Notes under the pieces: generated by a model
Databases searched by the model: none
The model's input: the letters and a program-made list of their open reading frames with translations, nothing else
Told to the model about the DNA's origin: nothing
Assembly (NCBI GenBank): GCA_002269645.1
Contig: NIVC01000210.1
Coordinates: 1-64,000, forward strand
Reading direction: 5' to 3'
Source of the DNA: Macrostomum lignano
Taxonomy: Eukaryota
DNA length: 64,000 bases
Shown here: positions 10,395 to 58,190 of the stretch, one piece after another
How positions within the stretch are numbered: the first letter of the stretch is position 1
Layout: each line of letters opens with the position of its first letter
Made by a program: the position numbers and the translations under genes

Positions 10395-10662
10395 AGTAGT
10401 ATAGAAAAAGACGCTTCTAGATCAGACCTTATTTTAATGGCCGTTTGTAAGGTCTTAAGAGGGGGGACGCGAGGGGGGTGTTAGGGAGTGTTTGGAAGTG
10501 TTGGGAAGTGATTTTTATTGTTAGGGGTGATTATGGGTGATTAGATGTGTTAAGGGTGTTTAGATGTGTTTTTTTATTTACCCCCCGTGTCCCCCCTCTA
10601 GACCCTTAAAACGGTCATTAAAAAAGTGCTCTGGGTCTAGAAGCGTCTTTTTATATACTACT
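10395..10662. repeat. Polinton terminal region with an internal inverted copy of the terminus
   Basis: 10395 AGTAGTATAGAAAAGACGCTTCTAGA...GAGGGGGGACGCG versus reverse complement of the end AGTAGTATATAAAAAGACGCTTCTAGA...GAGGGGGGACACG. Confidence 0.85.
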
Positions 10663-12100
10663 ACGCTAGCAAAGTCGGATTGCAGCTTCGTAATCTCATG
10701 AGCTGCTGGCGCAGCCGCTGCCACCGCTGCCGCATCTTCATATTTGGCAGAGTCAGCAGCTGGCCTCAGCTTCTTTGAGGCCGCCACAGCAGCCTTACTA
10801 TCGCCGTATTCTTGAGCAGTTTTCAAAGCATCGGTATGAGCAGTTATATCGGCCTCTGAGAATTTCGGAGCTAACTCCGATTCAACAAGTTTACAAAGGT
10901 TTTCTAACTGCTGAAGCCGTTCGCCGTAAAACTCGTTCCAATCGGACAGAAGTTTTGCTTTCGTCTTCGCTAACCTTGCCGCCTTGCTTGCGGCTGCCTT
11001 CAGTGACTCAAGCTTGGCCTAACCAAAATGAAAGAGAAAATAGTTGTTGAAGTTTAGCTTCAGGACGTATCTATTCATGTGCAGAATGATTACGTAAATA
11101 ACTACCTATTTTTTAGCATATGTCAAACGTAGATTATATTCATCATTCGTCGGAAATTTACTACGAGAAATACAAAACTGATTGATTGTCGTTCCGCTAC
11201 GAAACGAGTAAAAACGGAGCAGAGGCTAAAGCCCACCCACCAAGCCACCAACATACGCACGCAGAGCCAAGCACCCCCTACCCAGCGCGGACAAGAGAGA
11301 GAGAGAACGTACGCAAAGCGACACAAGGCGTGGCAGAGGAGAGGGGTTTAAATTTGGATATTGACTAGTCAAGACCAATCACAAACCAACACATATATGT
11401 TTAAAGATCCTCGGCTAGCACCATTCTGACTAACATTTGTTTTAACGAAAGCTGCTTTCACATTGGAATTATACTTGGAGTACTGGAAAAAAAACAGCCA
11501 AACTTAATAATGTAAAACATGTTTCCAGATTAACTGGTTGTGAGGCACTGAGAAAATTTATTATTTATTATTCTTTGATTCTTTGATTCTTTTCTATGTC
11601 AGAATCAATTAAAATCACGCGAGACTATGCAGAATTTGAAATGTTGCGAAACAAGCTTTACCTGAAATTTACGTTGATCGTCGCTAAAATGTAAAGCGCA
11701 AAGATTCCGATCGCAGTGCTCGCAGAAGCCCATCGAAGGCTTCCCGCATGGTCTTTGAGCATCATTTTCCAAGGCTTCACATAGCAGTTTCTGTCTTTTT
11801 GTTTGACTTGTGACATCTTGTGGCGTAGCCTTAGCCACTTCAACCAGGGTGCGCAGATGGGAATTTTCAACCGGTCTTCGTCGCAAGTCCTCGAAGCACA
11901 GAGGGCATTTCGCACCACCGGATCCTGCCTCTTTTTTGACACTTTCGTAGCAGGCCAGGCACAGTGAATGGTGATTCGAGCACGCATAGTGTGGGTTATT
12001 AAAGTAATCGAGACACACCGGACAGGTAACATCGTTTATGTCGATTATAGAATTTCGTCTTCCAGCTAAAAGATACGAGCGTATAATGTATGATTATCAA

Positions 12101-12162
12101 GAGGTCACGCTTCACACACAGCTGCCATAGCGGTAAGGCAGTTGTGTGTGAAGCGTTACCTC
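12101..12162 (+). other. 26-bp-stem hairpin of pre-miRNA size within intron 1 of TRIM-like copy 1
   Basis: GAGGTCACGCTTCACACACAGCTGCC / 10-nt loop / GGCAGTTGTGTGTGAAGCGTTACCTC. Confidence 0.45.
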
Positions 12163-12459
12163 TCGATAGTGGAATTGTGTCTATTTTCGTCCAAAAACCA
12201 ATTCAAAACGGCTAGGACACAACTTCCCAGACGGGAATTGTTCACTAAGCGATTCTAGGGATTTGTGTCATAGGCATTTTCCACTTGGTGCAAGCCAAGT
12301 GATGGCCATAGACTAAACGTCTGGAACAAAAAGTTAAGCGGAACAGTCTGAAATTACCATAGACGAAACATGTTAAATGAAGTTGTGGTCTTATAAGCTG
12401 GAACTCTGCAGCAGAGGATAACATGTTCCTGTTTCCTCTGTTTGCCCTAACCTCTATTC

Positions 12460-12816
12460 ATGCGACTCATACGAATGATAAATTGGTCGAATTTGCCGAT
12501 TGAAAGCATTGACAGCTTGAATGGAAATGAGCTCAACTTTCTCAGCGACTTGAGTATGGGGGGACGTGACGAGGCGGATGACGAAGAGTTGATGGAGTTC
12601 ATCCGATTCATTGAATGCGATAACGATGATGCTCTGCCACCACTGCCAAGCAAAGAAGAGGCTTGCTCCGAGGATCCCATGCGGAACAAAACATGCAATT
12701 CGGCCGATGTGAGTGTAACGTCTAAAGACATTTCTTATATAAATAAGACATTTCTTATTATTTTACTTTTCTTACATGTATACAATCTGTTTATTCAGCT
12801 TTGTTGTATTGAATAA
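12460..12816 (+). CDS. Orphan acidic ORF or exon inside the intron, similar to ORF 61861-62106
   Basis: MINWSNLPIESIDSLNGNELNFLSD aligns with MLNYANLPDQLISGLSTEKLHWVSS; possible donor GTGAGT near 12710. Confidence 0.35.
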   Translation: MRLIRMINWSNLPIESIDSLNGNELNFLSDLSMGGRDEADDEELMEFIRFIECDNDDALPPLPSKEEACSEDPMRNKTCNSADVSVTSKDISYINKTFLIILLFLHVYNLFIQLCCIE

Positions 12817-13818
12817 AAAATATCCTCGCAAACGCATTGATACAGGAATATCAGATTGCTCATCTGCAAATGGGTATATCCAAATATAACCCGTTGGGAA
12901 TATTCAAAGATGGGGGCGGTTTGACCATAGACTATTCGCAGATAAGCAATCTGTTGTATTCCTGTTTCGATGCCTGAAAGGCGTGCAAAAATTTACTTAG
13001 TTCACAATTTCCGTCGACGCAATCGTTTGTGGCCCAAACGAAACTAGACACAATAAGACTGGCTAAAGTCAACTACAGCCAATAAATTTGCGTAAATTTT
13101 ATGATCACAAAATAATTACGCACAAAAACTGTGCGTAAAACTCAGTAACTTACCTCCGCTTGAAGAGCTCATTGCAGTGACAAGTTAGCTTATCGCGAGT
13201 TATCAGCTTTTGGGTAAAACACTCCGAAAAAACTTATTCGCCCACTGCGCCCACATTAAAGTATATACCGAAGTATCATGAAGTATATCCTTGGCCTATA
13301 TCCGACATTAAAACCTCGCGCAGCTCACAGCTCGCAAAAGCTCATACAAAATCTATTTTTAGCACAAGCAACTCCTCCCTTGGCAAGCAAAGCGAAACAT
13401 AGAATTCTGGCTTAATTTTAGCACAATCACATTGAAGCATCTTTCCAGTATTTTTTTGTATTATTTGCAGGCTCATTTTTGCTATAATTTCTTTTTGAGA
13501 AAGTCAACATTGAGTTGCTTTTTGGGTTTAGTCGACGAAATAATGAAGAGTAGCCATGCAGCATTCGCATTGATGCAAGTCAAACTGAAAATAAAAAGGG
13601 TCACTAGTACACCATTTTTCGTTCAATTCCAATCCAAGTCAGTAGTAGAGGATAACACAACTCTGCCGCAGGGAAAGCCATGGGAATTCCGTAGACTCCT
13701 ATGAGAGTACATAGGCGCATGTGTTTACATAGGAGATATTTGTATATAAGCCACAAAATTGTTCTCATAAAAAAGAATTTTTTAAAATTCTCGCTCCGTT
13801 ACATCGTAATAACTAATA

Positions 13819-14583
13819 ATGGTCGATATTGGAGAAGGCTATAAACTCCAAGTGCAAGAGTACGAAGGAGTACAGTTTATTGCGATTCGGAAATTTTATC
13901 GACATGGCAGCACAGCAAGTTTGAAACCTGGCGTTCCCGGATTTAACCTCAACATCCGACAATGGGAGAAGTTGAAAGAACTGAAGCGAACTCTCGTGAA
14001 GGCGGCCCTGGGCGAGCAACAGAGGGTCATCAAACTCGGTTTTGATAAGTTCGTTGAGGTAAAGAACGGCATCATCTGGCTAAGACGGCTTCCGGAAGAT
14101 TGTTGCGAAGAATTTTTGAAGCGAAACACTGTGGCGTTGGCACCAGCTCTGTGGCGGAAACTGTGGGAGCAGGCTGCATGGATCGACGAGCAGCTATCTG
14201 CCCCACTCCAAATGTCCGATGTGTATGAGCTGGAGTCGGGATCTTCCTCCGACAACATCGAAAATGAAGACGCGGAAGAGACCAAGCCGGTAGTGAAGAT
14301 GGAGGACTTGGAGGATGCTGCGCCTGCTGCTGCTGGCGATGTGGCTGGCATGCCATCCAATCTGCAAATCGACACAGCGTTTGCCACTTCAACGCCTCTG
14401 CAACTGAGCAAGCCTGCAGCTGGAGCGATTCCTCGGCAGGACACTGATCTGCAAGAGGACCCAGTCTGGTACCAGTTCCGAGCTCAAGCAGCCGCCGCTG
14501 AGAACGCCAGGAAACGCGAGCAGCCACCGTTCGCTCTGCGCAGATTGGTTGCCATGAAGCTGCCCAGGCCGTGCTTCGACTGA
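13819..14583 (+). CDS. Tandem PC4-like ssDNA-binding domain protein with low-complexity tail
   Basis: IGEGYKLQVQEYEGVQFIAIRKFY...PGVPGFNLNIRQWEKL fits the PC4 pattern; a second degenerate copy LGFDKFVEVKNG...LAPALWRKL follows. Confidence 0.75.
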   Translation: MVDIGEGYKLQVQEYEGVQFIAIRKFYRHGSTASLKPGVPGFNLNIRQWEKLKELKRTLVKAALGEQQRVIKLGFDKFVEVKNGIIWLRRLPEDCCEEFLKRNTVALAPALWRKLWEQAAWIDEQLSAPLQMSDVYELESGSSSDNIENEDAEETKPVVKMEDLEDAAPAAAGDVAGMPSNLQIDTAFATSTPLQLSKPAAGAIPRQDTDLQEDPVWYQFRAQAAAAENARKREQPPFALRRLVAMKLPRPCFD

Positions 14584-14743
14584 TTGCTGACCCTCTGACA
14601 TTGAGACAAACTCTGTGCTTTTTTTATCCAGACCTGCTTTCCATCTCTTTGTTTGAAAAAAATGCTTGTTTTCACATGCGCTATGCAATTTTCAATGTCT
14701 TAAGAAAAAACGAAAAATAAAATATGTTTCTTTGTTTCTGAAA

Positions 14744-15811
14744 ATGGAAAAAATTCATTTCAACCCAAATCAGCCTGCGAGCTGTTGCAGTTTTTCAAAA
14801 CTGCAACATGAACTGCGAAAAAGAGGCGAGCATATTGGAGTCAAGAGCATTGAGCAGTGTCTAAGTCAGCAGCCAGTACACACTCTGCATAAGCCAGCTA
14901 GAGTACGATTTCCAAGGGCGCCAATAATAGTGAGGGCCATTGATGATCAGTGGGAGATGGATGTGGTGAAAATGATTCCGTTTGCAAAGTATAATCGCGG
15001 GCATAAATACATTCTCACCTGCATTGATGTTTTATCTAAATTTGCAATGGCCCGAGCACTGAAGTCTAAAAGCGCGGCAGAAGTGAAATCTGCGTTTGAG
15101 AGCATGCTGAAGAGCTCAAAGCGGCAGCCGCGCACTGTCCGCACAGATCAGGGAAAGGAGTTTGTCAACGCAATTTTTCGCCAGTTCTGCATAGACCGGG
15201 GGATTCTGGCGTTTTCAACTAGCAGTGAGCACAAAGCAGCCATCATTTAAAGATGGAATCGAACTTTAAAAAGCAAGATGTGGCGTTACTTTACTCACAA
15301 CAGCACTCTACAATGGCTTGAAGTGCTGCCTAAACTGGTCAAGTCCTATAACAATACTTTCCACAGAAGCATCAAGACTACATCAATGAATGTCAGCAAA
15401 GCAAACGAGACTGAAGTGTGGATGAACCTTTATGATGGGAAAGCGATTGAGACAGTTGAGAAACTGAGAAAACCGAAGTTCTGTGAAAACCAATCAGTGC
15501 AGATTTCCAATGCACCCAGACTCTTCAGGAAGGGATACAAGGCGAACTGGAGCGAGGAGGTGTACACCATAGTGTTTAGGGCACCAAAGCATTATCCCTA
15601 CATGTACAGGATTCGAGACATGAAGGGGGAAGACATTAGAGGCCTCTTCCACGAGCATGAGCTGCAAGTTGTTCCGGACTCGCAGCGGCTGTATGTAATC
15701 GAGAAGGTTCTGAAGACTGAGAAGCGGAAGGGTAAGATCCGATATCTCGTCAAGTGGGCCGGCCACAAGTCCACTGACTGGGTGGATGAGAAGGACTTGA
15801 GAAAAGTGTAA
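14744..15811 (+). pseudogene. Polinton-type retroviral-like integrase with C-terminal chromodomain; one in-frame stop
   Basis: HTLHKP, DQWEMD, TDQGKEF, AII*RWNRTL (TAA at 15248-15250), KGYKANWSEE and chromodomain IEKVLK...YLVKWAG...WV. Confidence 0.93.
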
Positions 15812-15841
15812 GATACCGACATTGTGCAGCTATTCCCAACT

Positions 15842-16216
15842 ATGAGAAGCATAATCATTTGTAGCGAAAATGCTGAAGGTACTCCTAGTGACATTCATTT
15901 TCAACTGCCTTCACCTATTTACTTAGATCGAAATGTGGACTATGAGGCAGGTCTGGCTGAAATCCATCTGCCTGCTGCATGGTTCAATGTTGACGAGCCT
16001 TACTGCTTCACTGTCTCAGATGGAAGAGAGCATGAGACCCTGGTTCTTCAACCCGGACGCTTTGCTAGAGTGGAGGAACTGGTTGAGTGTGTTAATAAAA
16101 ACATAGCCGCTATGTTTTCAGCTTTGCTATGTTTACAGTCAGCCACCCAATGTCCAATGGTTTCATCAGCGCTTCCAGGTATTGAGCCCTTGTTGAATTC
16201 CCGCACGCTCCGCTAA
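15842..16216 (+). pseudogene. Truncated Polinton minor capsid (penton-like) protein N-terminus
   Basis: SDIHFQLPSPIYL...YEAGLAEIHLPAAWFNV matches the N-terminal pattern of Polinton minor capsid proteins; the ORF ends after about 125 aa. Confidence 0.7.
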
Positions 16217-16957
16217 ATTCTTTTGAATACGCCGCCAACTTTACCCCGCCCAGTCGAGGGTGGCAATAAAACTGATAACTGCTGAGCACTCTCTCCTTTC
16301 AGCAACAAAGCCACCGCCGCCAGCTCCCAGACAGCGGGAGAGAGAGGCTTGGCTACCACTATTTTTGTTTACAGAAATTTGTTATTACCGATAAAATTAT
16401 ATAATAAAGTATTAGTATAATACTGAATACAATAAAATATCGCTGATATTTGCCAATCGTTCAACACAATTTCTACAGATTCCCCTAGCTCGCCTCTGTG
16501 CATACTTGCGGATTCCCCCATGAGGCGCCTATGTACTCTCATTAGGAGTCTACGGAATTCCCATGGCTTTGCCTGCGGCAGAGTTGAGCTATGCAAACAC
16601 ATAGGCGCCTTCTGATCCGGGCCCACGGAATTTCCGTGGCTTTCCCTGCGGCAGAGTTGTGTTATCCTCTATTACTCAAGTCATATTCTCAATTTATAAA
16701 AAACAGACATTTAGTTTCGCAGTTCTGTATTAATCTTACCAAACCAACATTCATACTAGATGAACCGAAACTCAGTTTAAAAAAATCGTTTAAACTTAGA
16801 CACTCAACGAAAGTGGTTTAATTATGTCCATGGAAGGGCTTGATGATTCATGAATTTCTTCCATCGATTTGCCGGGTTTATATTCGAATAAGAAAAGTAA
16901 CATTACATTTTGACTATGGAATAAAAACTGTTTCCTAAAACTCTGTTTTTTAACTTC

Positions 16958-20077: not shown

Positions 20078-21052
20078 ATGGCCATTGAAAACGACTTCCG
20101 CTTTGCCCTAATCTCAATTGTGAGCGTGTCAACAGTCTTCAACGCCCTGTTTCTAATTTTTACAATTCAGAAAAAGATTGGCACCCGTCTCTGCACCGTC
20201 CTGTTGCGCAGTCAGTCAGCCATCGACTTGCTGCTCATCGGAGCAAACTTGCTGGTTATGCAGTTCAGTAGCTACCTGCCGGAACTCAGCCAGTCAATGC
20301 CAGACTTCATTTGGCAGCTCTACTGCAAACTGTACATGAGCCAGCTCCTCTATTGGGGTCTTGTCTGCATGAGCGTCTACAATATCCTGGCCATATCAAT
20401 TGAGCGCTGCATCTGTCTCTGCTGTCCGTTCTGGTATCGTTTAAACAAGCAAAAGCTGCTGGCAATGCTTGTCATGCTGATCATCGTTTCACCGTTTCTG
20501 GTTGAGGCACCGTACTGTCTGGCTGCGCGATCCGTTACTTACGTAGACAATGGAAACGGAACGTTTGTGACGGCTTGCCCGTACAATTTCGACCCAGAAG
20601 ACGAAAAAATCATTGGTATTTCCTATGTAACCTTGTTCTGGATTTTTCCTTTCTGTTTGATTGTACTGCTCTACTTGTTCATCATTTGCCAAATCCGAAA
20701 ATCGGTTGGCATGCGGGAGAGTGCAGCTGCTGGCAGCAGAAATGCCATCAGTGCCGCCGCAAAAAAACTGACCCTGACGACTGGCGTCACAGCGGCAGCC
20801 TTCGTGCTTCTATTCGCTATGGACAGCGTCACATTTCTGCTGTACAACATCGAGACAAGAATAGTCCTGCCACCGTTTTTTGGCGAACTGGACTCGTTCC
20901 TTGTGAGCATGAACAGCGCGGTAAATCCGCTAATCTACTTGATATTCATGCCGGAGTTTCGACGATTCTTGCTTTGCCGACGACGAGTTCAAAGCTCAAC
21001 TGGAAAAAACAGCGGCGCACAGCCAGGAGTCCCCGGTGCTGTGTCTGCTTAA
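20078..21052 (+). CDS. Class A (rhodopsin-like) GPCR, intronless, orphan
   Basis: Seven hydrophobic segments, ISIERC (DRY-equivalent), NSAVNPLIY (NPxxY), Cys in ECL1/TM3 and ECL2. Confidence 0.92.
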   Translation: MAIENDFRFALISIVSVSTVFNALFLIFTIQKKIGTRLCTVLLRSQSAIDLLLIGANLLVMQFSSYLPELSQSMPDFIWQLYCKLYMSQLLYWGLVCMSVYNILAISIERCICLCCPFWYRLNKQKLLAMLVMLIIVSPFLVEAPYCLAARSVTYVDNGNGTFVTACPYNFDPEDEKIIGISYVTLFWIFPFCLIVLLYLFIICQIRKSVGMRESAAAGSRNAISAAAKKLTLTTGVTAAAFVLLFAMDSVTFLLYNIETRIVLPPFFGELDSFLVSMNSAVNPLIYLIFMPEFRRFLLCRRRVQSSTGKNSGAQPGVPGAVSA

Positions 21053-23187
21053 AACTATCTGTGTCTGCAGACCATTGCGTTTGATCTAGACTGGGTTCTT
21101 AGAGTTCTTGGAGTAGTGCATGCACATTAGCTCTTTAGAGTCCACTTTTGTCTAATGAAACCAAAAAACAATTTTGTTATAACCGTAAAATGCAGTTCGA
21201 AGCAAATGAGTTATTTTCTACTTTATGAAATTTTCCACAAATTGCGATCGAACTTATAAAGCATTGTTCGTTTCTAATATTTTGTGAAATTTACTTTTTC
21301 AGCCTGAAAGCTCTCCGGAATCTTCGACTCGATGCGTCTAAACTTCATGTCCTGAAAAACGGGTAACGAAAATAGTTACATAGCTACATAGTTATTTAGT
21401 CTGATAATATATATCATTCCATAGCACGTTGTCAATCTACAAGAGCTATTAAGATTTCTGACTAGTAGCGTAATTGCTAAATGTTACTAAAATGGGACAT
21501 TTTTTGGTTCATGAAGCTGTATTAAGATCAATACGTCTTTTAATGCGCTTTTAATTGCAGTAACTTACAGATAGCTACTAGGAAATAAAAAACTTGTTCC
21601 ATTAAATGGATCGATGCACAAAAAGGCAATGCATTCGGGCACAATAGTCGGACCCGAAACATCAAATATCCCATCATATTTTCTTTTTTTCTTGTTATTG
21701 ATTGACTTCTTTACTGATAGACGTTAACTGAGACATCGATCGAAATGGATCTGGCCTAAGAATGAATCCAATTTATTTGTCTAGTTGCATCGCTGGACTA
21801 ACCACGCATTTTCCGGAGAAACTTAGTTGGGAAACAAAAAGGTTTATTTTCTTATTTATTTTCCGGAAATGAAAAACGCAAATGATTTTTTAAAAACTAC
21901 GGTTTTTTCTTGTGTAATTTGTTTTTTTCATTAATTTATTGGTTTCTATCAGTCGAACTTCGATTACTGTAAATGGGGCATCAATAATCCCGGAAAATTT
22001 TATGAAACAAATAACAAAGCATTGCTATTGCATTGGATTGTTCTAACTTTAAAAATTTCCCGAACAGTCACAAGGAAGAGAAAAGCAAAGAGCGTTCGGA
22101 GGAAATTTCAATTGTTCGTGTATACGAATTTCTACATGGCGAAACCCCATTTATCTTAGTGAGGCGAGAAAAGCAAAAAATATGAATAAATCTGTTGTGA
22201 AGACACAACTGTAGCCATGCTTATAATGTTCACTACCAAGTCTTTAATAATATGAGCTGTTTTTTCAAAGTACGAGTATTTTATGGACAAACTTTGCTGC
22301 ATTTGAAATCCGGAAGTCGAGAAGGCGAGAATCGTCATCAGTGCTGAGAAGCAGACAAATTCCTAACCGACCTCTGGTGAAACTTCTTCTAACTTAGTTG
22401 CCAGTCATGTTCTGCAATATTTCCACATTCTTATTTCAAGTGACGGGTCGAAGTTCTGAAAATAAAAATTCTAGGCCATGAAGATGAACAACAAAGACCA
22501 GGAACAAACCCAAATCGAAGAGTTATAACTTGATGAAGCTTTATTTAATATTCATTTAGGGTTAGGTTCTCCAAAAATGTGTAGCTAAACCAAACTAAAG
22601 AAGTAAATCTTGCCCGCAAACTGGAAGAGTTGTACATTTTCCAAAGATTTAAGGGGAGGAGGGCGCTATAGAAAAAGACAAGGCACGGCTTGAATTTAAA
22701 GCTCGTACAGTACATTCAAACAAAATAGCCAAAATGGTTCGAAAATCTACTTATGCAATTACTTTCGTTGAAATCTATGCAATATACAAAAATAAAAAGT
22801 CAAATATAGAAGTCTGTTTATTTTAAAGCCGTTTACGCTCGTGTGATTACCGATCAAGTATGGCTTACGTTTGATCATTTAGGGTAAAATTAAGAAATCT
22901 TAAAAGATTAAAAAAGTACACAAAACAAAAACAATGCGCAGAACGGAAGAGGAATCGATAAAATTCGATCTAGCTTATTGATTATTGACTTTTAGAAGCC
23001 ATATGCAATAAAAAATAGAAAAAAAAGAATTTTGTCGCCATTCACTTCACCAATACGCGGAACAGACGAATTCAGCCTTCATTCAGAGATGCTTGAACAC
23101 CAGCGCTACCGGTTGAGAAGTGAGCAACCTCTCGAACTCCACTATTTTGAGCCAAAACGGTGCGCGCAACGCTAGGGATATTGGTGC

Positions 23188-24988
23188 TCAACTTGATTGA
23201 TCCGAATGTTTGCTTATCCTGCTCCACTGAAATAAGAAAGATAGTGTTATAAAAGAAACTGCCAGTGGTAGGCCTGTAAAATTATTGCATTCAATCATTT
23301 CATCGTTATGCTTACGTTTGAAAGTTTTATCCTTGATGTCACCCTGAGCAAAGTGCTCGCCGAGATTTATCACAGTATTGCAGAAGGGCACTTTTAATGG
23401 TGAACTATCTGAGCAGCACAGCCGAATCGCTACATGCAGCTCTTTGTCGGGCAATTTCTGAAAGCTGTAGTTAAATGTTGCCATGTAGTTGAACTGGATT
23501 TCTAGTTCATCGCCACTGCGCTTGCACTTGTTAGAATTCGACAATTCTACTTTTGCTGAGTAGTTCCAGTTCCAGTCAGAGTTCATTTTAAATCCGACGG
23601 AACAGTTCGTTGCATCCGAGGGGAGAATTTCCTTCTGAAACTTTACGCTGACGATATTCAGATTGCAAGTTTTTGTTCGCGCAGCTCGAATGTAGAGCTG
23701 CATCATTTCGTCAGTGACGCTAGCAAACTCGGATTGCAGCCGTGTCGTTTCATGAGCTGCTGGCACAGCCGCTGCCACCGCTGCCGCATCTTCATATTTG
23801 GCAGAGTCAGCAGCCGGCCCCAGCTTCTTTGAGGCCGCTGCAGCAGCTTGAATATCGTCGAAGTCTAGAGCCGTTTTCAACGCGTCGATTTGACCAGTTA
23901 TATCGGCCTCTGAGAATTTCTGAGCTAATTCCGATTCAACAAATTTACTAAGGCTTTCCAACTGCTTTAACCGTTTGCCGTAAAAGTCTTTCCAATCGGA
24001 CAGAAGTTTTGCTTTCGTCTTCGCTAACACTGCCGCCTTGCTTGCGGCTGCCATCAGCGACTCGAACTCGGCCTAAATGAGAATTTTAGTTCAAGTTTGA
24101 ATTCTAGCTTCGGGACGCATCATTTTATGTGTAGAATATTTAAATAGCCGTTTAAAGGCTTTTGTCACTCCTCCGGTAGTAACAAAAAAAATATTGATTT
24201 TTTATGCAACGATTAAGAAAGCTTATTAATAAAAAAATAATAATAAACTAAATTTTGTTTTAACAAACTGCTTTAATATCGGAGTAATATCGGAGTAACG
24301 TCGTACTTGGAGTACTAGAAAAACAGTCAGTACTAGAACAGTTAATTTGAAACGTGTTTATAGATTTACGTGTGAGACGCTGAGAAATCCATAAACGAGC
24401 GTACTAAAAATGGTTTGTCGGTATCTAGCTCTAGGTATGCGATCGATTTCGAAGCAAACTTACTTGAAATAGAAGTCGATCGTCGCTATAATGTAAACCG
24501 CAAAGATTCCGATCGCAGTGCTCGCAGAAGCGCATCGAAGGTTTCCCGCATGGTCGCTGTTGAGCACCATTTTCTAAGGCTTCACATGGAGGCTTCTGGC
24601 TGTTTGTTTGTCCTGTCAAATCCTTTGGCGCAGCCTTGGCCGCCGCAACCAGGATGCGCAGCTGGGAATTCTCAACAGGTCTTCGCAAGTTCTCCTTGCA
24701 CAGCGGGCATTTCGCCTCCCTGGGTCCTGAGCTGCTAACAAAACCTTTGTAGCAGGCCAGGCACAGTGAATGGTGATTCGCGCACACATAGTGGGGGTTA
24801 TTAAAGAAGTCGAGACACACCGGACAGGTAACATCGTTCCTGTCGATTTTGGAATTTTGACTGCCAGCTGAAAAACAGATAATAAGATAAGCTAAAGTTA
24901 ATCCCACAGAGAATTAATATTATGCTGCAAGCTAAACTGCATTTAAAATTTTGAAACTCCGTAACTTACCTCCGCCTGAACCGCTCAT
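23188..24988 (-). CDS. TRIM-like copy 2: RING + B-box-like + coiled coil + C2-like domain, apparently intact (about 435 aa)
   Basis: Exons 24970-24988, 24464-24867 and 23188-24072 join in frame via GT-AG. RING CPVC...CANHHSLCLAC...CPLC; B-box-like CGKPSMRFCEHCDRNLCGLH; tail FNYMATFNYSFQKLPDKELHVAI...FCNTVINL is C2-like. Confidence 0.82.
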
Positions 24989-25347
24989 TGCAGTGTCAGT
25001 TAACTCAGCTCTTAGGTAAAACACTTCGAAAGAACTGCTTTGCCGGCTCTATATGTATTATTCTAGCCGCATGTACATCAAACCTCACACAGCCTACACA
25101 CAATTTATTTTTAACGCAAGCACTCTTCTCCTTGGGCAAGCTTTTCATTTTAAACACAATTGCATTGAGGCATCATTCAGACGTGCTTTTCTGCGCATGC
25201 AAATTTGTGCTATTATGCTTTCTTTTTGAGTAAGAATGGCCTTTCACATTGATGCGAGACAAACTGAAAATGAAATGGGTTATTGGCATCTAGTAGCTGG
25301 CTAAAAATAAACCTGTGGTCTGAAAGAACACTAGAAAATTCAAGAAA

Positions 25348-25930: not shown

Positions 25931-26700
25931 GTATCGACAGTATCGACAGTATCGACAGTACCGACAGTATGGACAGTACCGACAGTATCGACAGTACCGA
26001 CAGTACCGACAGTACCGACAGTACCGACAGTACCGACAGTATCGACAGTACCGACAGTACCGACAGTACCGACAGTATCGACAGTACCGACAGTACCGAC
26101 AGTACCGACAGTATCGACAGTACCGACAGTACCGACAGTACCGACAGTATCGACAGTACCGACAGTACCGACAGTACCGACAGTATCGACAGTACCGACA
26201 GTACCGACAGTATCGACAGTACCGACAGTACCGACAGTACCGACAGTACCGACAGTACCGACAGTACCGACAGTATCGACAGCACCGACAGTATCGACAG
26301 TACCGACAGTACCGACAGTATCGACAGTATCGACAGTATCGACAGTACCGACAGTATCGACAGTATCGACAGTACCGACAGTATCGACAGTACCGACAGT
26401 ACCGACAGTACCGACAGTATCGACAGTATCGACAGTACCGACAGTACCGACAGTATCGACAGTACCGACAGTACCGACAGTACCGACAGTACCGACAGTA
26501 CCGACAGTATCGACAGTACCGACAGTATCGACAGTACCGACAGTACCGACAGTATCGACAGTATCGACAGTACCGACAGTACCGACAGTACCGACAGTAT
26601 CGACAGTACCGACAGTACCGACAGTATCGACAGTATCGACAGTACCGACAGTACCGACAGTATCGACAGTATCGACAGTACTGACAGTACCGACAGTATC
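25931..26700. repeat. 9-bp tandem array (CGACAGTAY)n, about 85 units, mixed T/C variants
   Basis: Direct reading; both AGTATCGAC and AGTACCGAC units are interleaved. Confidence 0.97.
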
Positions 26701-28182: not shown

Positions 28183-28874
28183 CGACAGTATCGACAGTAT
28201 CGACAGTATCGACAGTATCGACAGTATCGACAGTATCGACAGTATCGACAGTATCGACAGTATCGATAGTATCGACAGTATCGACAGTATCGACAGTATC
28301 GACAGTATCGACAGTATCGACAGTATCGACAGTATCGACAGTATCGACAGTATCGACAGTATCGACAGTATCGACAGTATCGACAGTATCGACAGTATCG
28401 ACAGTATCGACAGTATCGACAGTATCGACAGTATCGACAGTATCGACAGTATCGACAGTATCGACAGTATCGATAGTATCGACAGTATCGACAGTACCGA
28501 CAGTATCGACAGTATCGACAGTATCGACAGTATCGACAGTATCGACAGTATCGACAGTATCGACAGTATCGACAGTATCGACAGTATCGACAGTATCGAC
28601 AGTATCGACAGTATCGACAGTATCGACAGTATCGACAGTATCGACAGTATCGATAGTATCGACAGTATCGACAATATCGACAGTATCGACAGTATCGATA
28701 GTATCGACAGTATCGACAGTATCGACAATACCGACAGTACCGACAGTATCGACAGTATCGACAGTACCGACAGTACCGACAGTATCGACAGTATCGACAG
28801 TACCGACAGTACCGACAGTATCGACAGTATCGACAGTATCGACAGTAACGACAGTACCGCCAGTACCGACAGTA
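28183..28874. repeat. 9-bp tandem array (CGACAGTAT)n, about 77 units, mostly the T variant
   Basis: Direct reading; same unit and orientation as 25931-26700. Confidence 0.97.
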
Positions 28875-28970
28875 TAGATACTCAACAGTAGATACTCAAC
28901 AGTATTATAGTTTTAGTTCATTAGTCAGAGTACTTCAATTCAGTGTGCAAGTCGATGCAGTGGAAGTCCT

Positions 28971-32797: not shown

Positions 32798-33969
32798 CAC
32801 CAAGCACCAAGCACCAAGGGGCTTTAGCACCAAGGGGCTTTAGCACCAAGAGGCTTTAGCACCAAGGGGCTTTAGCACCAAGGGGCTTTAGCACCAAGAG
32901 GCTTTAGCACCAAGGGGCTTTAGCACCAAGGGGCTTTAGCACCAAGAGGCTTTAGCACCAAGGGGCTTTAGCACCAAGGGGCTTTAGCACCAAGGGGCTT
33001 TAGCACCAAGGGGCTTTAGCACCAAGGGGCTTTAGCACCAAGGGGCTTTAGCACCAAGGGGCTTTAGCACCAAGGGGCTTTAGCACCAAGGGGCTTTAGC
33101 ACCAAGAGGCTTTAGCACCAAGGGGCTTTAGCACCAAGGGGCTTTAGCACCAAGGGGCTTTAGCACCAAGGGGCTTTAGCACCAAGGGGCTTTAGCACCA
33201 AGGGGCTTTAGCACCAAGGGGCTTTAGCACCAAGGGGCTTTAGCACCAAGGGGCTTTAGCACCAAGGGGCTTTAGCACCAAGGGGCTTTAGCACCAAGGG
33301 GCTTTAGCACCAAGGGGCTTTAGCACCAAGGGGCTTTAGCACCAAGGGGCTTTAGCACCAAGGGGCTTTAGCACCAAGGGGCTTTAGCACCAAGGGGCTT
33401 TAGCACCAAGGGGCTTTAGCACCAAGGGGCTTTAGCACCAAGGGGCTTTAGCACCAAGGGGCTTTAGCACCAAGGGGCTTTAGCACCAAGGGGCTTTAGC
33501 ACCAAGGGGCTTTAGCACCAAGGGGCTTTAGCACCAAGGGGCTTTAGCACCAAGGGGCTTTAGCACCAAGGGGCTTTAGCACCAAGGGGCTTTAGCACCA
33601 AGGGGCTTTAGCACCAAGGGGCTTTAGCACCAAGGGGCTTTAGCACCAAGGGGCTTTAGCACCAAGGGGCTTTAGCACCAAGGGGCTTTAGCACCAAGGG
33701 GCTTTAGCACCAAGGGGCTTTAGCACCAAGGGGCTTTAGCACCAAGGGGCTTTAGCACCAAGGGGCTTTAGCACCAAGGGGCTTTAGCACCAAGGGGCTT
33801 TAGCACCAAGGGGCTTTAGCACCAAGGGGCTTTAGCACCAAGGGGCTTTAGCACCAAGGGGCTTGAGCACCAAGGGGCTTTAGCACCAAGGGGCTTTAGC
33901 ACCAAGGGGCTTTAGCACCAAGGGGCTTTAGCACCAAGGGGCTTTAGCACCAAGGGGCTTTAGCACCAA
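32798..33969. repeat. 16-bp tandem array (GCACCAAGGGGCTTTA)n, about 72 units
   Basis: Direct reading; near-homogeneous, with a few AAGAGGC variants. Confidence 0.98.
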
Positions 33970-44900: not shown

Positions 44901-46561
44901 CGTCCCGTGTCCCAGGGAGACGCAGGAAAATGACAGAGCAGAACTCACGAGCTTCCGTGAAAAAGCCGATGCAGTTCGCACTTTGCTATGGTAGACAAGT
45001 AAGTTTGTTTTGAAGTAGCCAACGATAGGACCAAGAAAACGCAAGGCCGCGGCTGCCCACTAGACAGCAAATTTATTATATTATATTAACTGATATATAA
45101 TATATATAATATATTATTAATTAATAATAATATATTATTAATAAATAAGCTCCATAATAATATATTATGGAGCTTATTTATTATATCAGTTATATCAGTT
45201 ATAATATATACTTTCTTTATAATATTATAATATATATATATAAGTTATAATATATTTAAGGTACTTTCTAATGTATTTAAAAAGGTAAACTAACTCAGCT
45301 AGAGGCTGGATGTTTTTAAAGTATCTCACAGTTAAAAATATAAATTTCGGCACCCTTCTCTACTGCAAGTCGTCTCCGCTGCACATACATAAACTCTTAC
45401 TCTTCTTGAACTTTTAAATTTGTCATTTATTCTTACCATTTTGCATCTTTGTCTTGATGAGATGATTTCACCTTACATCATCTAGCCTCTACAAGAGTTA
45501 TTTTACCTTTTTAAATTTCATTACAAATTTCGGAGAACTGCCTTTGGTTGCGCGTGTGCAGTGTTTGCTTTTGCTAGTTCTCCTAGTCCTAGCTAATGCC
45601 TCTTAGCTAAAATGGGCTTTTCTCTGAGCCTGAAGGTAAACGGAGGGAGCTAGTTAATAAACAAGCTGTATCACTTTGTACGCCTGCTCACTCTTACGCT
45701 TTATACTGGGCCTCTTCATCTCCACGCTGCATCCGTCTTTTCAGGGCTACTCTAAGACAGATTGAGTTCAACAAAGTTCAACATTGTTTAAGAAAAATGG
45801 TTAATGCCTACACAGCCTGGGGATCATCGTTTTACGCACAGACTTTCAAATCAAGAGAAGAGTACGAGTGCTCTTACAAGCAGACATTTAGTTCGTATTT
45901 AGTCTTGCAGTCCATCTTATAGCTACGCTTTTTAGAAACACAGAATCGAAGGCAGAATAGATAGAAAAAGACAAATAGTGGTTGGTACTTTTGCATATCC
46001 TTGTAAGTAGCATGATAGATGCTTTCTCTGGGTTTCGTAGTAGATTTGCTCACGTATGCGTGAGGAAAATGTTTTGTATTTATATTTTAGAATTTTAAAC
46101 GTACTAAAAGTGGAATATTCAATCATATATTTCAGCAGTATAGTTAAAATATGGAAGAGCAGGGCAGCTATTGAAACAGTGAACTACACTGGAATAAATA
46201 ATTTACGGGTTTATAATAAGTGTTTTATATGCATAAATTAGTTTTACCTGTGTGCAGTTGCAGCTACACTCATACAAAAACTAGCTACTTAGGAAGTTTA
46301 CAAGTTAAAATTTTATTTGCTTCAAAAAGTGAGCTTGAGTTTAGGAACTGAGGAGCCTTTTGCGTTTCTAAATATCATTGAAGTCATTGTGGAAATAACA
46401 GACAAACTGCTAAATGGTGCTGGGGTTAGTGATAGTGAAGAAAAAATCTACATTCTTCAAACTCCGACTTCATCGGGAATGCTGTAAGTTGTATGTCCTG
46501 AGTTAACTTTTTGCTTTTTTGTCATGGCTTTGAGACATAGCAATTGTTTGCTGCAAAAAGA

Positions 46562-47200
46562 TTATTCTGGAATGCCACCGCAAGTTCTAGTTGCAGTGTC
46601 GATTACGGTGTCCAGCTTTGATTTACAAGCTTCAATTTCCTTTTTCTGCTCACTGGTTTGAGGCAACCCGAAAGCTTTCGATTCCAGCTTGGGCGCTTCA
46701 GCAGTAGCAGCTTTCAGCCGGTCTGCGATGGCTTTGGCTTCCTGCATTTGGAAAGATTGAAGGGATTTTTGCAGGCCCTCCGTCTCAGCCCCTCGGGAAG
46801 ACCCAGCAGCTGCCTGCTCCAGCCTCTGCTCTGTGGTTCTCAGCAGCTTCTCCAGGTGCTCTTTTTTCTTACCGATAAATTCGATAAGATTTTTTGATTT
46901 GAGCTTTCCAAGGCTGCAGTGTAGCGCTGACTTGTGCGCATTCCTTTGCGTCCTTCTCCACTGTGTTCAACAGGTTCAGGCATTCAGTCTAAAATATAAG
47001 CGTTCCGTCTTATTAATTTGAATTCGAATAAATCTTAAATACTTCAGGTTCCATTACCTGAAACTTCGATCGATGATCGCTGAAGTGCACATCACAAAGA
47101 TTCTTGTCGCAGTGACCGCACTTGACGAGGATCGAGTAGGAGCATTGGCTTTCGCCTTCGCCTGCGCTAAAATAAGTGCCTGCGGCGCTAAAGTCAGTGC
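46562..47200 (-). pseudogene. TRIM-like copy 4: RING deleted, B-box remnant + frameshifted coiled-coil exon
   Basis: QCSYSILVKCGHCDKNLCDVHFSDHRSKFQ then GT...TTTTAG then TECLNLLNTVEKDAKEC; one extra A in a poly-A run shifts the frame. Confidence 0.8.
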
Positions 47201-47539
47201 TAAAGTTTGATGGGGCTTGGAGTTCTTAGTTCAAAAACCAGTTTCACGCGAGCTCGCATAGATTTATTTTTATGTTTTAAAACTCCCTCCCCAGATGCAG
47301 TGAATTCTAAGCAAAAAAGGAAATAAAAAGCGCACTTAAAGCATTTCACCACCTTTTAACTTCATTGGCAAGAACATATTGGATTTTCACTTATTTGCAG
47401 ACAGTTTCAGATAATAAAGCCTGCAGGAGTATCTTAGCTACCTTTGGGAAGTGACGTTGTGCAAGCTGATGATACCGTTTTGTCTTTGTTGTCGCGGTGA
47501 CCAGATGGTTTACTTGCCAGAAAGCTTTAGTGCGAAGCA

Positions 47540-47850
47540 GAGCTGGAACTCACTGGAACTCCGCCCCTTGAGTGCCATACTGCGCCGGCGCCGCCAGATG
47601 CTGCTGGGCCACTGCCTACGGACCCTGGGTCGCGGCACGCCCGTCCCTCTGGCCCTGACCATGCTGCACCGGCCGACCGAGCAATTGCGCCGTGGCCAGG
47701 CTCGCACTGCCACCTAACGAACTGCCTCATCGCTGACTTGCAGGCGCTTGAGCTGACCCCTCAGGCTGCTGCTGCCTGCCCCTCCCGCCTGTTCTGCGAA
47801 CGCGTGCGCGCAAGGACCTCCCCTCTGCGTCTTATTATATATATACTCGT
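47540..47850 (+). mobile_element. RTE-like LINE 3' fragment
   Basis: LELRPLSAILRRRRQMLLGHCLR...PTEQLRRG typical of RTE RT C-termini; (TA)n-rich tail. Confidence 0.7.
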
Positions 47851-48429
47851 ATATTTACCGCAGCCTAATTCCGCTGCGCCTTAAATGTTTTCTTCAAAAT
47901 AACCCAGCTATTCCCCGCAACAACTTGGGCTGCAGACAAAAACCATATGATTGGCTTGCACAACGCCATTTCTTAAAGGTAATTAAAACACTTCTACGAG
48001 CTGTATTAAATACAATCAGTTAGCTTTGTCTGCCAGTTAATGACATTACATTATGCTCTTGGTGAGTAAGTAAAGAGGTGGTGAAATTCTCAAGGTGCCA
48101 TTCCTTTATTCCTTCTGCATCTCCATGTATTGTTGCCTAAACGAATGGAGTTTAATTTGAGTTTAAACTCCCTTCGAAATTTAGTTTTTACGCATGTAAA
48201 TTTGCTTGAAACGGACTTCGACCCTAGAACTCAAAGCCCTTCCCAACTTTCATCTACAACACACTCACCCCTACTACTACTGGCCCCACTATGTTTTTCT
48301 GACCAATCACGTTACTGTTCGACAGGTGGCATCACTTGATTGCTTGGCGAGGAGGTCGAAGACAGCTCATACTCATATCGAAGAATATTTTATGTATCCT
48401 GTCAAGCATTTAATGTGTGCCACCTAGCT

Positions 48430-48680
48430 TAGATGGGCCTCCTACCCCCGCAATGGACGCCCAAACAGTACTAGCAGCCCACTGAGCGCCTGCGCCGTGG
48501 CCAAGGCCGAACTGTGACGCTAAATGATACGTTTCTGACTGACTTACAGGCCATCGGACTCAGCCCCCAGTCCGCCATGACTTGCCCTTATCGGTTGTTC
48601 TGCGAACGCGTCCTTGCAAAGACTAGCTAGATGTCTTTTTGTCTGTGCTTCTCTCTGCATCGCTATATATATACGAGTAT
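48430..48680 (+). mobile_element. Shorter RTE-like LINE 3' fragment, same family
   Basis: Shares TGCGCCGTGGCCA and GTTCTGCGAACGCGT with 47540-47850. Confidence 0.65.
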
Positions 48681-48928
48681 ATACCTAGCTTAGATACGAG
48701 ATAATTTGTGTCTCCAGGGTTTCTGTTTACCGGCTCGGTCCCTCTTTAGGAACTGGACTCGCTTTAGCACCGCTCAATAATACTCATCATCTACGTCTTT
48801 TTCCGTTTCTACTCGTACGTAGTAACGTAGTATATTTTAAAGTAGAAACATGGATTCTAAATATCATTATTAGAATGTTAGAATGATACTAGAATGTTAT
48901 TCGACAGATAAACCCTGAAATTTTAGAT

Positions 48929-49700
48929 ATGAGCTCAAGAGACGACGAAGACCTGAAGTGCCCGGTGTGCAAATACATCTTTACTGATCCGTGCTTCATG
49001 TGCCCAAACCACTACACTCTGTGCCGCAAATGTCACAAACGCGTTTTGGAGATGTCCCTTTTTGGACCCGCAAAGTGTCCGGTGTGCCGAAAGATGCTTT
49101 CCACACCAACAGAGCACGCCTCCATGGCCAGGATCGTCAAAAAATCCAACTCAAAACCGCCGCCCAGCGCCACCTACCAGGTACGCGAACAGAGATCCCG
49201 GTGCTTCAACTCAGTCTTTGTCAAGTGCGGCCACTGCGACCTGAATGTTTCCAATCTGCACTTCGTTGAAAATCGGATGCAGTTTCAGGTCATTTAAGCT
49301 TAAGTATTTAGCAGGTATTAACTCGAAAACACATAATACGGAACGCTTGCCTTGCCAGACTGAATGCGAGAACTTGTTAAAATCTGTGGGGAATGACGCG
49401 AAGTAATGCGACAAAGTCAGCGCTAAACTGCAGCCTTAGAAAGCTCAGATCACTAACCTTAGCAAATTTATCGATCTAGAAAAAAGCGCTTAGAGCAGCT
49501 CTAGAGAACCACAGAGCAGAGGCTGGAGCAGGCAGCGGCTGGGTCCTCCCGCCGAGCTGAGGCAGACAGCCTCAGCGCCGAAGCTGGAGTCGCAAGATTT
49601 CGGACCGCCTCCAACCGATGAGCAGAAGAATGAAATCGAAGCTTGCAAAGCAAGGCTGGTCTCCATAATCGGGACTGCAACACGAACTTTGGGTGGTGTC
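48929..49700 (+). pseudogene. TRIM-like copy 5: intact RING/B-box exon, coiled-coil exon with nonsense mutations
   Basis: Exon 48929-49288; the next exon starts at 49359 (ACT GAA TGC) and hits TAA after 15 codons, with further stops downstream. Confidence 0.82.
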
Positions 49701-57650: not shown

Positions 57651-58084
57651 ATCCGGGCGCCAAAAGTGACAGCAAAACGCCCATAAATAAAAGGAGAAAG
57701 TAACAGAGCGAGTGGGGAGAAAGCTGGAAAGACCTCTTTGACCCAGACAGGCTGGAGCCAAAAGTGACAGCTAGACGGCCATAAATCACCGAAAACAGTG
57801 AAAAAGCCGCAAATCTGGGGGTCAGAATGGGGTCGAAAACACTCCTCCCAGACTTGGTGTCGCCTGTCTAGACTGTTGGAGGTCAATCCGTCTCAAACCC
57901 AGACAGTCTGACCCTTACATTAAGTCCTTAGTATAATTAATAGTAATGCTATAACATAGTATAAAGTTCAGCCCAGATGAGGGAATTTGAGAGAAAAACC
58001 AAACCTAGCCTACTGACAGTAAGGGAAAAGCGCATCGAAGCCAACTGCGCTGTTTTAAGATTGAAAAAAGGTGCGTCCTCATCA

Positions 58085-58190
58085 CATTCAACGGAGTGCT
58101 ACCACGCGGCCCTGACGAGCTTTCACCCCCAACATCGTGATTTTTCTGTCAAGGCACCAAGCCAGGCATGTGTGCATATTATACAATGCT
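58085..58190 (+). repeat. About 105-bp direct repeat, copy 2
   Basis: Matches 55946-56050. Confidence 0.75.

What the first reader, a model, noticed from the sequence alone, without database searches (positions are those of the whole stretch)
10578..11018. Polinton inserted into a TRIM-like exon, creating an open host-virus chimeric frame
Comparison with copy 2 fixes the junction: host ...GCT AGC GT|C ACT versus here ...GCT AGC GT|A GTA GTA. All three exons and splice sites appear intact, and the frame reads about 27 codons into the element end (VVYKKTLL...GGHGG*). The product would be RING/B-box/coiled-coil lacking the C2-like tail, potentially a dominant-negative form of a possible antiviral E3 ligase. 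The predicted TSD is ACGCTA at the unseen left end.
Basis: partly seen in the sequence, partly recalled or inferred. Interest (0 to 1): 0.85.

Follow-up and report, generated by a model that had tools for sequence, protein, structure and literature searches.

The report
Maverick element interrupting a RING gene
One end of a Maverick/Polinton-type virus-like element lies inside the third coding exon of a flatworm-specific RING-finger gene and removes its last 184 residues; this is an ordinary gene-disrupting insertion, and the 27-codon host-virus read-through is about as long as chance would give.

Summary
On the minus strand, a Macrostomum lignano-type RING gene ("copy 1": exons 13172-13154, 12065-11662, 11018-10663) is identical in register to its paralogue (copy 2, 24988-23072) and to the published gene BOX15_Mlig013468g1 up to ...GCTAGCGT. 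It then runs into AGTAGTATATAAAAAG. That is the terminus of a low-GC element (1-10662) encoding a protein-primed DNA polymerase. The terminus carries the published Maverick end motif (AGT)2/(ACT)2, which relatives with integrase, double-jelly-roll capsid and packaging ATPase also have. The frame stays open for 27 element codons, then meets TAA.

The read-through is chance-level: 16-30% of controls are as long, and the same frame closes after 3 codons in the element's own inner repeat arm and at four of the six related terminal arms read. Only the RING resembles TRIM proteins. No B-box was detected, and the lost C-terminal domain is an orphan, not a demonstrable C2 domain. The left end, the target-site duplication, an empty allele and expression could not be reached. 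The dominant-negative antiviral reading has no evidence.

The most likely consequence is a null or truncated allele of one paralogue. Interest is low to moderate.

The parts
1..10662 (.). Visible part of the integrated Maverick/Polinton-type element. It runs off the window at the left. GC is 27-34% against about 44% in the host.
   Evidence: Composition step; compact ORFs; pPolB homologues in invertebrate genomes and metagenomes; relatives carry rve, DJR capsid and an A32-like ATPase.
5065..7898 (-). [quoted passage not shown] As assembled it carries one frame change relative to single-ORF relatives and has no in-frame stops otherwise.
   Evidence: Best homologue E = 9e-150 at 54% identity; Pfam PF02945; both halves map head-to-tail on P0009.
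7895..8692 (-). Conserved ORF immediately upstream of pPolB; function unknown.
   Evidence: 37% identity to the ORF in the same position in L003.
479..2369 (+). Fibre-like gene region: a 57-bp (19-residue) repeat array at 647-1072 and an F5/8 type C (discoidin) domain. There is at least one frame change along the array.
   Evidence: TRF; Pfam PF00754 E = 1.5e-12; frame count.
10392..10662 (.). Terminal foldback unit of the element, 5'-(AGT)3ATAG...TATAT(ACT)2-3'. The inner arm is 10392-10476, a G/T-rich loop follows, and the outer arm is 10581-10662.
   Evidence: Inverted repeat of 90 bp at 82%; DNA hairpin -62 kcal/mol, z = -13.8; equivalent units at element edges in L002.
10657..10662 (+). 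Element terminus ACTACT-3', the Maverick end motif.
   Evidence: Sequence; motif 5'-(AGT)2//(ACT)2-3' reported for Mavericks (PMC8097293); AGTAGTATA also at the termini of L002 and L003.
10663..10668 (+). First six host bases, ACGCTA: the candidate target-site duplication. The second copy is unseen. GT microhomology leaves a 2-nt ambiguity.
   Evidence: Homology with copy 2 and L001 starts here.
10578..10662 (-). Element-derived tail of the chimeric reading frame: the last base of the split codon, 27 codons and TAA.
   Evidence: Translation.
10573..10578 (-). AATAAA hexamer overlapping the stop codon. It is a possible poly(A) signal; this is inferred and is expected often in AT-rich DNA.
   Evidence: Sequence read directly.
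10663..11018 (-). Copy 1 exon 3, the host part that remains (coiled-coil-like region).
   Evidence: 84% identity to copy 2 and 88% to L001; splice acceptor.
11662..12065 (-). Copy 1 exon 2: C3HC4 RING and a Cys/His-rich segment, with all zinc ligands kept.
   Evidence: RING hits to TRIM RING structures.
13154..13172 (-). Copy 1 exon 1 (ATG...GAG|gtaagtta).
   Evidence: Approximate search, 3 mismatches to copy 2 exon 1, phase 1; flanking homology 13138-13242 <-> 24954-25044.
23072..24988 (-). Copy 2, the uninterrupted paralogue (4 exons, 444 aa). The site equivalent to the insertion lies between 23716 and 23717.
   Evidence: Gene model; 95% identity to BOX15_Mlig013468g1; alignment.

Best explanation
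A Maverick/Polinton-type integrating dsDNA virus-like element has inserted into the third coding exon of one of two tandem paralogues of a Macrostomum-specific RING/helical gene, after codon 259 of about 444.

Shown:
- The host reading frame and its homology to two uninterrupted genes stop exactly at the element's terminal ACTACT.
- The upstream three exons are intact.
- The frame runs on by chance for 27 codons in the terminal repeat and stops.

Inferred:
- Integration was made by the element's retroviral-type integrase, with a 6-bp duplication (ACGCTA).
- The rest of exon 3 and exon 4 lie beyond the unseen left end.
- The insertion is younger than the gene duplication, because 259 codons carry no disabling change.
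- The functional outcome is loss of the orphan C-terminal domain, that is a null or truncated allele, buffered by the intact paralogue 11 kb away.
For: - Junction defined against two empty-site sequences.
- The terminus matches the published Maverick end motif and the termini of relatives.
- The relatives of the pPolB carry rve integrase, DJR capsid and an A32-like ATPase.
- Sharp GC step and compact viral-style ORFs.
- The 3' part of copy 1 is nowhere else in the window.
- Copy 1 versus copy 2: dS 0.23, dN/dS 0.64, no stop or frameshift, and all RING ligands kept.
- The read-through is chance-level and not conserved in paralogous or orthologous termini.
Against: - Only one end of the element is visible, so TIR, TSD and the continuation of the exon are unverified.
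- No integrase or capsid gene lies in the visible 10.6 kb.
- The source assembly is not in the searchable collections, so neither read support nor an empty allele could be examined.
- No expression data were available, so 'null allele' is inference.
- dN/dS of 0.64 leaves open that copy 1 was already under relaxed constraint.
Confidence: 0.78

Rival explanations
1. The truncated gene is expressed as a stable RING/coiled-coil protein with a 27-residue element-encoded tail. It acts on the paralogue's complex as a dominant-negative or new-function form.
For: - Promoter-proximal exons and splice sites are intact.
- The stop lies in the last exon, with an AATAAA overlapping it, so nonsense-mediated decay need not apply.
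- The RING ligands are intact.
- The paralogue shares 74% identity in the helical region.
Against: - The tail is chance-length and not conserved.
- No copy 1-type protein, with or without the tail, exists among 5.8 billion clustered proteins that include transcript-derived ones; only 4 hits were found, all copy 2-type.
- Nothing shows that the family is antiviral or that it dimerises.
- The B-box and coiled coil are not demonstrated.
Confidence: 0.08
2. The junction is an assembly artefact: a free linear viral genome end, or a chimeric read, joined to host sequence. On this reading there is no germline insertion in the exon.
For: - The element runs off the window.
- Only one junction is seen.
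- The element's genes are nearly intact and of foreign composition.
- A relative (L002) appears with repeated gene blocks that could be read as episomal concatemers.
Against: - The host side stops mid-exon at exactly the element's last base, next to a plausible 6-bp target, as integrase-made junctions do.
- A random misjoin would have to hit the precise terminus.
- The 3' part of copy 1 is missing from the window, as expected if it was displaced by the insert.
Confidence: 0.05
3. The insertion is real but was accompanied or followed by deletion or rearrangement, or it hit a copy that was already a decaying partial duplicate. In that case no exon continuation or TSD exists at the left end.
For: - dN/dS of 0.64 between the copies.
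- Intron 1 of copy 1 is swollen to 1088 nt by palindromic insertions, and a TIR-bounded integrase element lies 470 bp upstream.
- The collinear Mlig_3_7 contig diverges before reaching copy 1.
Against: - There are no stops or frameshifts in 259 codons at dS 0.23, and indels are in multiples of three.
- A roughly 150-bp tract of the Mlig_3_7 gene is identical to copy 1, which indicates recent exchange between functional-looking copies.
Confidence: 0.09

Closest known systems
Maverick/Polinton elements of animals (for example the vertebrate Mavericks of PMC8097293 and the nematode Polintons of PMC10748475)
   Same: - Protein-primed PolB.
- Terminal motif 5'-(AGT)2...(ACT)2-3'.
- Integration into host DNA.
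- Foreign base composition.
- The nearest pPolB relatives carry rve integrase, DJR major capsid protein and an A32-type ATPase.
- An HNH-type nuclease insert in pPolB has been described for some Polinton lineages.
   Different: - Only the polymerase-proximal 10.6 kb is visible.
- Integrase, capsid, protease and ATPase are unseen.
- Instead of demonstrable long TIRs between the two ends, this end carries a local 271-bp foldback, also seen in relative L002.
- It has fibre-like genes with a discoidin domain.
- No Polinton has been described from Macrostomum in the searchable literature.
Adintoviruses (exogenous Polinton-like animal viruses)
   Same: Same gene kit in the relatives (pPolB, integrase, DJR capsid); compact overlapping ORFs; a weak match to the adenovirus pX core protein.
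   Different: Here one end is joined to host DNA at a precise terminus, so this copy is integrated. No evidence of virions or of an episomal form was sought or found.
TRIM (tripartite motif) E3 ligases
   Same: An N-terminal C3HC4 RING whose best solved-structure matches are the RINGs of TRIM31, TRIM30, TRIM5 and TRIM21 (E = 3e-6 to 1e-3). It is followed by a Cys/His-rich stretch and a long helical region.
   Different: - No B-box was detected by profile or sequence search.
- The coiled coil is not confidently modelled.
- The C-terminal domain is not one of the known TRIM domains and has no homologue outside M. lignano.
- The family has only four database members.
Exonic transposon insertions that truncate a host gene and terminate it inside the element
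   Same: The host frame runs into the element end until the first stop, which gives a short element-encoded tail and a possible element-provided poly(A) signal.
   Different: Nothing distinguishes this case from the generic one. The tail length is chance-level and expression is untested.

Membership tests
Polinton/Maverick | [quoted passage not shown] | tested here: met
   Gene at 5065-7898(-). Homologues reach E = 9e-150, some with PF03175. Pol motifs are readable in the ORF. Head-to-tail match to the 793-aa P0009. One frame change as assembled.
Polinton/Maverick | Retrovirus-like (rve) integrase | tested here: inconclusive
   No rve was found among the ten largest ORFs of 1-10662 put through Pfam; the smaller ORFs listed were not scanned. 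The element continues beyond the window. The relatives L002 and L003 encode PF00665 next to the same pPolB.
Polinton/Maverick | Morphogenesis module (DJR major capsid, minor capsid, A32/FtsK ATPase, adenain-type protease) | tested here: inconclusive
   Not in the visible part. The relatives have PF21738 DJR and a weak PF04665.
Polinton/Maverick | Characteristic termini (5'-AG..., (AGT)2//(ACT)2 end motif) | tested here: met
   The element ends ...TATATACTACT at 10662. The motif is as published and is shared by the L002 and L003 termini.
Polinton/Maverick | Terminal inverted repeats between the two ends | not testable with these tools
   The left end is outside the window. Only a local inverted copy of the terminus (10392-10476) is seen.
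Polinton/Maverick | Target-site duplication of 6 bp (range 5-8) | not testable with these tools
   One flank only. The candidate is ACGCTA at 10663-10668. The source contig is not retrievable.
TRIM proteins | N-terminal RING finger | tested here: met
   C3HC4 pattern. PDB phmmer hits TRIM31/30/5/21/34 RINGs at E = 2.8e-6 to 7e-4. Pfam RING models match at E = 8e-5 or weaker, but below their gathering scores.
TRIM proteins | B-box zinc finger after the RING | tested here: inconclusive
   A Cys/His pattern is present (C-x11-C-x7-C-x2-C-x4-C-x2-H). There is no zf-B_box match at E <= 10 and no TRIM hit once the RING is removed.
TRIM proteins | Coiled-coil dimerisation region | tested here: inconclusive
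   Helices are predicted at 135-274, but the model has mean pLDDT 31.6. The only match is a weak one to a myosin coiled-coil chimera, E = 0.33.
TRIM proteins | Recognised C-terminal domain (PRY-SPRY, NHL, COS-FN3 and others) | tested here: not met
   No Pfam family at E <= 10. phmmer against 1.84 billion representatives finds only two M. lignano paralogues.
   No Pfam C2 match. The structure model is too poor to search, so fold-level resemblance remains untested.

The most novel reading that the evidence does not exclude
The insertion allele is transcribed from the host promoter. It is terminated by the stop and AATAAA that the element's terminal repeat supplies. The result is a stable RING-plus-helical protein lacking the orphan C-terminal domain, which pairs with the intact paralogue and alters its E3 activity. 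That would be a host-virus chimeric regulator created in one step by a Maverick integration.
Probability: 0.06. Interest if true: 0.6.

Novelty: new member of a known kind. Interest (0 to 1): 0.3.

Why it matters
If confirmed at both ends, this is a clean, probably recent Maverick/Polinton integration in a coding exon of the model flatworm Macrostomum lignano or a close relative. The searchable literature describes no such element from this group.

It would provide three things:
- a natural knock-out or truncation allele of a lineage-specific RING gene;
- a presence/absence marker for population and subgenome studies;
- a nearly intact reference copy for describing this pPolB clade, including its unusual terminal foldback.

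It does not in itself reveal a new mechanism. Exonic insertions that end a host frame inside the element are routine.

Tried and rejected
1. Retrieving the source contig or an empty allele failed.
   - Exact look-ups of window-encoded proteins (a pPolB ORF and the GPCR) found nothing.
   - The last homology search, meant to walk further along NIVC01002920.1 through a GPCR paralogue, returned no hit.
   - The one retrievable M. lignano contig (L001) is collinear with window 35772-19286 only and diverges before copy 1.
2. An AlphaFold2 model of the full-length paralogue from a 4-sequence alignment had mean pLDDT 31.6 and was unusable, so no fold search was run.
3. Looking for remote homologues of the lost C-terminal domain gave only M. 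lignano paralogues.
4. I considered that the 271-bp TIR-loop-TIR unit is an independent MITE that hit the exon, with the large element merely adjacent. I rejected this for two reasons.
   - Its left flank (TTATAG) is neither the exon continuation nor a copy of ACGCTA.
   - Equivalent units sit at three element edges in relative L002.
5. I considered that the 5-of-6 match between the host flank (TAGCGT) and the bases before the inner arm (TAGAGT) is meaningful. Most of it is the (AGT) repeat itself, and the remainder is about a 1/64 coincidence, so I did not pursue it.
6. I searched the literature for Polintons or Mavericks in Macrostomum and found nothing relevant.

Full report
**What is at the coordinates**

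Read on the minus strand, 11018-10578 is an exon. It opens after a canonical acceptor (ttttggttag|GCC), encodes an Ala/Lys/Glu-rich helical segment, and ends ...CAA TCC GAC TTT GCT AGC GT|A GTA GTA TAT AAA AAG ... GGG GGG TAA. The ORF list gives the same frame (10578..10826).

A self-BLAST of 10200-12700 finds a second copy of the gene at 23717-24873. Homology ends at 10663 <-> 23717.

**Gene models**

- Copy 2 has four exons (24988-24970, 24867-24464, 24072-23316, 23226-23072) and encodes 444 aa.
- Copy 1 has exon 2 at 12065-11662 and exon 3 from 11018.
- Exon 1 of copy 1, which BLAST missed, is at 13172-13154 (ATGAGCTCTTCAAGCGGAG|gtaagtta). It has 3 mismatches to copy 2, the same phase and the same donor, with flanking similarity.
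- The predicted product is 287 aa. Residues 261-444 of the full-length protein are missing.

**Host and empty site**

The copy 2 protein is 95% identical to Macrostomum lignano BOX15_Mlig013468g1. It has only three other database relatives, all from M. lignano.

The contig carrying that gene (NIVC01002920.1, locus L001) is collinear with window 35772-19286 at about 96% identity. The window therefore comes from M. lignano (another haplotype, subgenome copy or assembly) or from a sibling species.

The three-way alignment gives two independent uninterrupted versions of the target. Copy 2 and L001 read GCTAGCGT-CAC..., while copy 1 reads GCTAGCGT-AGTAGTATATAAAAAG. The missing 3' part of copy 1 is nowhere else in the window.

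**The inserted element**

- Positions 1-10662 have 27-34% GC against about 44% in the host and are packed with ORFs.
- The gene at 5065-7898(-) is a protein-primed family B polymerase with an Endonuclease VII/HNH insert (Pfam PF02945).
- Its best homologues (54% identity, E = 9e-150) come from metagenome assemblies and from mussel, crinoid, spider and aphid genomes.
- Two relatives fetched with their neighbourhoods encode an rve integrase, a DJR-type capsid protein, a phospholipase A2-like protein and, in one of them, a weak A32-type ATPase beside the same polymerase. The ORF just upstream of pPolB is conserved too. The clade is therefore of the Maverick/Polinton/adintovirus kind.
- In the window itself no integrase or capsid gene is visible, because the element runs off the left edge.
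- As assembled, pPolB carries one frame change relative to single-ORF relatives such as P0009. The repeat-bearing fibre-like gene carries at least one. Either could be a real mutation or a long-read homopolymer error.

**The terminus**

The element ends ...TATATACTACT at 10662. The end motif 5'-(AGT)2//(ACT)2-3' with 6-bp TSDs is the one reported for Mavericks (PMC8097293). Polintons are described as 13-25 kb with 5-8-bp TSDs (PMC10748475).

The relatives show the same AGTAGTATA at their edges. In L003 it lies at 7493, exactly at a GC step. In L002 it lies at 17445, 19626 and their inverted partners.

This makes 10662 a genuine terminus and the junction an integrase-type junction. The candidate duplication is ACGCTA (10663-10668). 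Because the host GT could equally be the element's, GCTAGC is the alternative.

The terminal 88 bp are repeated in inverted orientation 104 bp further in, at 10392-10476, beginning with (AGT)3. The last 271 bp therefore form a hairpin of -62 kcal/mol, z = -13.8.

It is not an independent MITE inserted in the exon, because its left flank is neither exon nor TSD. L002 has three comparable AGTAGTA...TACTACT foldback units (129, 92 and 262 bp) at the edges of its gene blocks.

I therefore read it as part of the end structure of this clade. Its role is unexplained; a local substitute for the panhandle used in protein-primed replication is one idea.

**Is the open chimeric frame meaningful?**

No.

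- Any exonic insertion is read until the first stop. A run of at least 27 codons occurs at 16% of start points in the terminal 300 nt, at 30% across the element's minus strand, and in 27% of shuffles of the terminal 200 nt.
- Entered in the same register, the element's own inner arm and four of the six related terminal arms read (the L003 end and both arms of L002 unit c) stop after three codons. The difference is a single base, TAT versus TAG.
- The tail is thus an accident of this copy.
- An AATAAA overlaps the stop (10578-10573), which could end a transcript there. That hexamer is common in AT-rich DNA, and no expression data were available.

**What the gene is**

- The RING is real. Its nearest solved relatives are TRIM RINGs: TRIM31 at E = 2.8e-6, followed by TRIM30, TRIM5 and TRIM21. 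Pfam RING models score below their gathering thresholds.
- With the RING removed, neither Pfam nor PDB sequence search finds a B-box or any TRIM.
- The C-terminal 184 residues removed by the insertion have no Pfam family and no homologue outside M. lignano among 1.84 billion representatives.
- The AlphaFold2 model is useless (pLDDT 31.6).
- 'TRIM-like' is therefore a resemblance limited to the RING and the general layout. 'C2-like' and 'antiviral' are unsupported.

**History of copy 1**

Against copy 2, copy 1 shows dS 0.23, dN 0.15 and dN/dS 0.64. There are two one-codon indels, no stops, and every zinc ligand is conserved.

Introns are unalignable, and intron 1 has grown from 102 to 1088 nt. 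The duplication is therefore old, copy 1 was kept open for most of that time, and the insertion is likely recent.

The L001 gene carries a roughly 150-bp tract identical to copy 1 inside an otherwise copy 2-like exon 3. This indicates gene conversion between the paralogues.

**Verdict**

The insertion reading is well supported at the one visible junction. The functional story is not supported.

The most likely state is a truncated or null allele of one of two paralogues, caused by a young Maverick-type integration. The main uncertainty is everything to the left of the window: the other terminus, the TSD, the exon continuation and the integrase. Read-level and expression support are also lacking. 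None of these could be reached with the collections at hand.

It is a new member of a known kind. Interest is low to moderate, mostly as a resource for flatworm genomics and for describing this pPolB clade.

Noticed in passing
window 10392-10662; L002 820-948, 17445-17536, 19626-19887; L003 7493: The element end is a 271-bp foldback: an inner inverted copy of the terminal 88 bp, both arms starting with (AGT)n, and a G/T-rich loop with short direct repeats. Relative L002 has three similar AGTAGTA...TACTACT units at the edges of its gene blocks, and the two edges of one block are not inverted repeats of each other beyond about 7 bp. This may be a clade-specific end architecture that replaces long TIRs.
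   Followed up: partly
window 10212-10309: A perfect 30-nt-arm palindrome with tandem TTTAGACCA(G/A)AT units lies between the foldback and the first minus-strand ORF. A TATAAATA/TATTTATA box is at about 10333-10340. It is possibly the promoter or origin region of the polymerase-side genes.
   Followed up: no
window 5065-7898 (-); L002, L003: The pPolB carries an Endonuclease VII/HNH insert. It is in two frames in the window and also in the metagenomic relatives L002 and L003, while other relatives (P0002, P0009, P0011) have one ORF. Whether the split is decay, assembly error or a shared feature is open.
   Followed up: partly
window 479-2369 (+): Fibre-like genes in the element: a 57-bp (19-residue) repeat array of 7.5 units at 647-1072, followed by an F5/8 type C (discoidin) domain ORF and a 259-aa ORF without matches. 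A carbohydrate-binding head on a repeat shaft would be unusual cargo for a Maverick.
   Followed up: partly
window 8777-9763 (-) and 9774-10214 (-): Two ORFs nearest the terminus have Gly/Ala-rich hydrophobic stretches. One has a weak match to the adenovirus pX/mu core protein (E = 0.01, below threshold).
   Followed up: no
L001 about 10970-11125 versus window 10830-10985: The exon 3 of the Mlig_3_7 gene contains a roughly 150-bp tract identical to copy 1 inside an otherwise copy 2-like gene. This points to gene conversion between the paralogues.
   Followed up: partly
window 12066-13153: Intron 1 of copy 1 is 1088 nt against 102 nt in copy 2. It contains palindromic inserts (12095-12168 and 12834-12973) that look like small foldback or MITE elements.
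   Followed up: no
window 13641-16676: An element bounded by inverted repeats (13641-13706 / 16611-16676) carries ORFs with an integrase-core-like sequence and a chromodomain-like tail (14666-15811). It may be a Ginger-like DNA transposon or a retroelement fragment and lies 470 bp upstream of copy 1.
   Followed up: no
window 25931-26698, 28183-28875, 32810-33969: There are large microsatellite-like arrays: two 9-bp arrays (85 and 77 copies) and a 16-bp array (72.5 copies, 99% matches). In L001 the span matching the 16-bp array is only about 220 bp.
   Followed up: no
window 20078-21052 (+); L001 19382-20323 (-): A rhodopsin-type GPCR gene lies between the two RING paralogues. The Mlig_3_7 contig has an extra inverted paralogue (70% nucleotide identity) at the point where collinearity with the window ends.
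   Followed up: no
window 46300-52800 and 56170-60460: Two sets of long inverted repeats (arms up to 314 nt at 82-96%, 2-5.6 kb apart) suggest further TIR-bounded elements or palindromic duplications.
   Followed up: no
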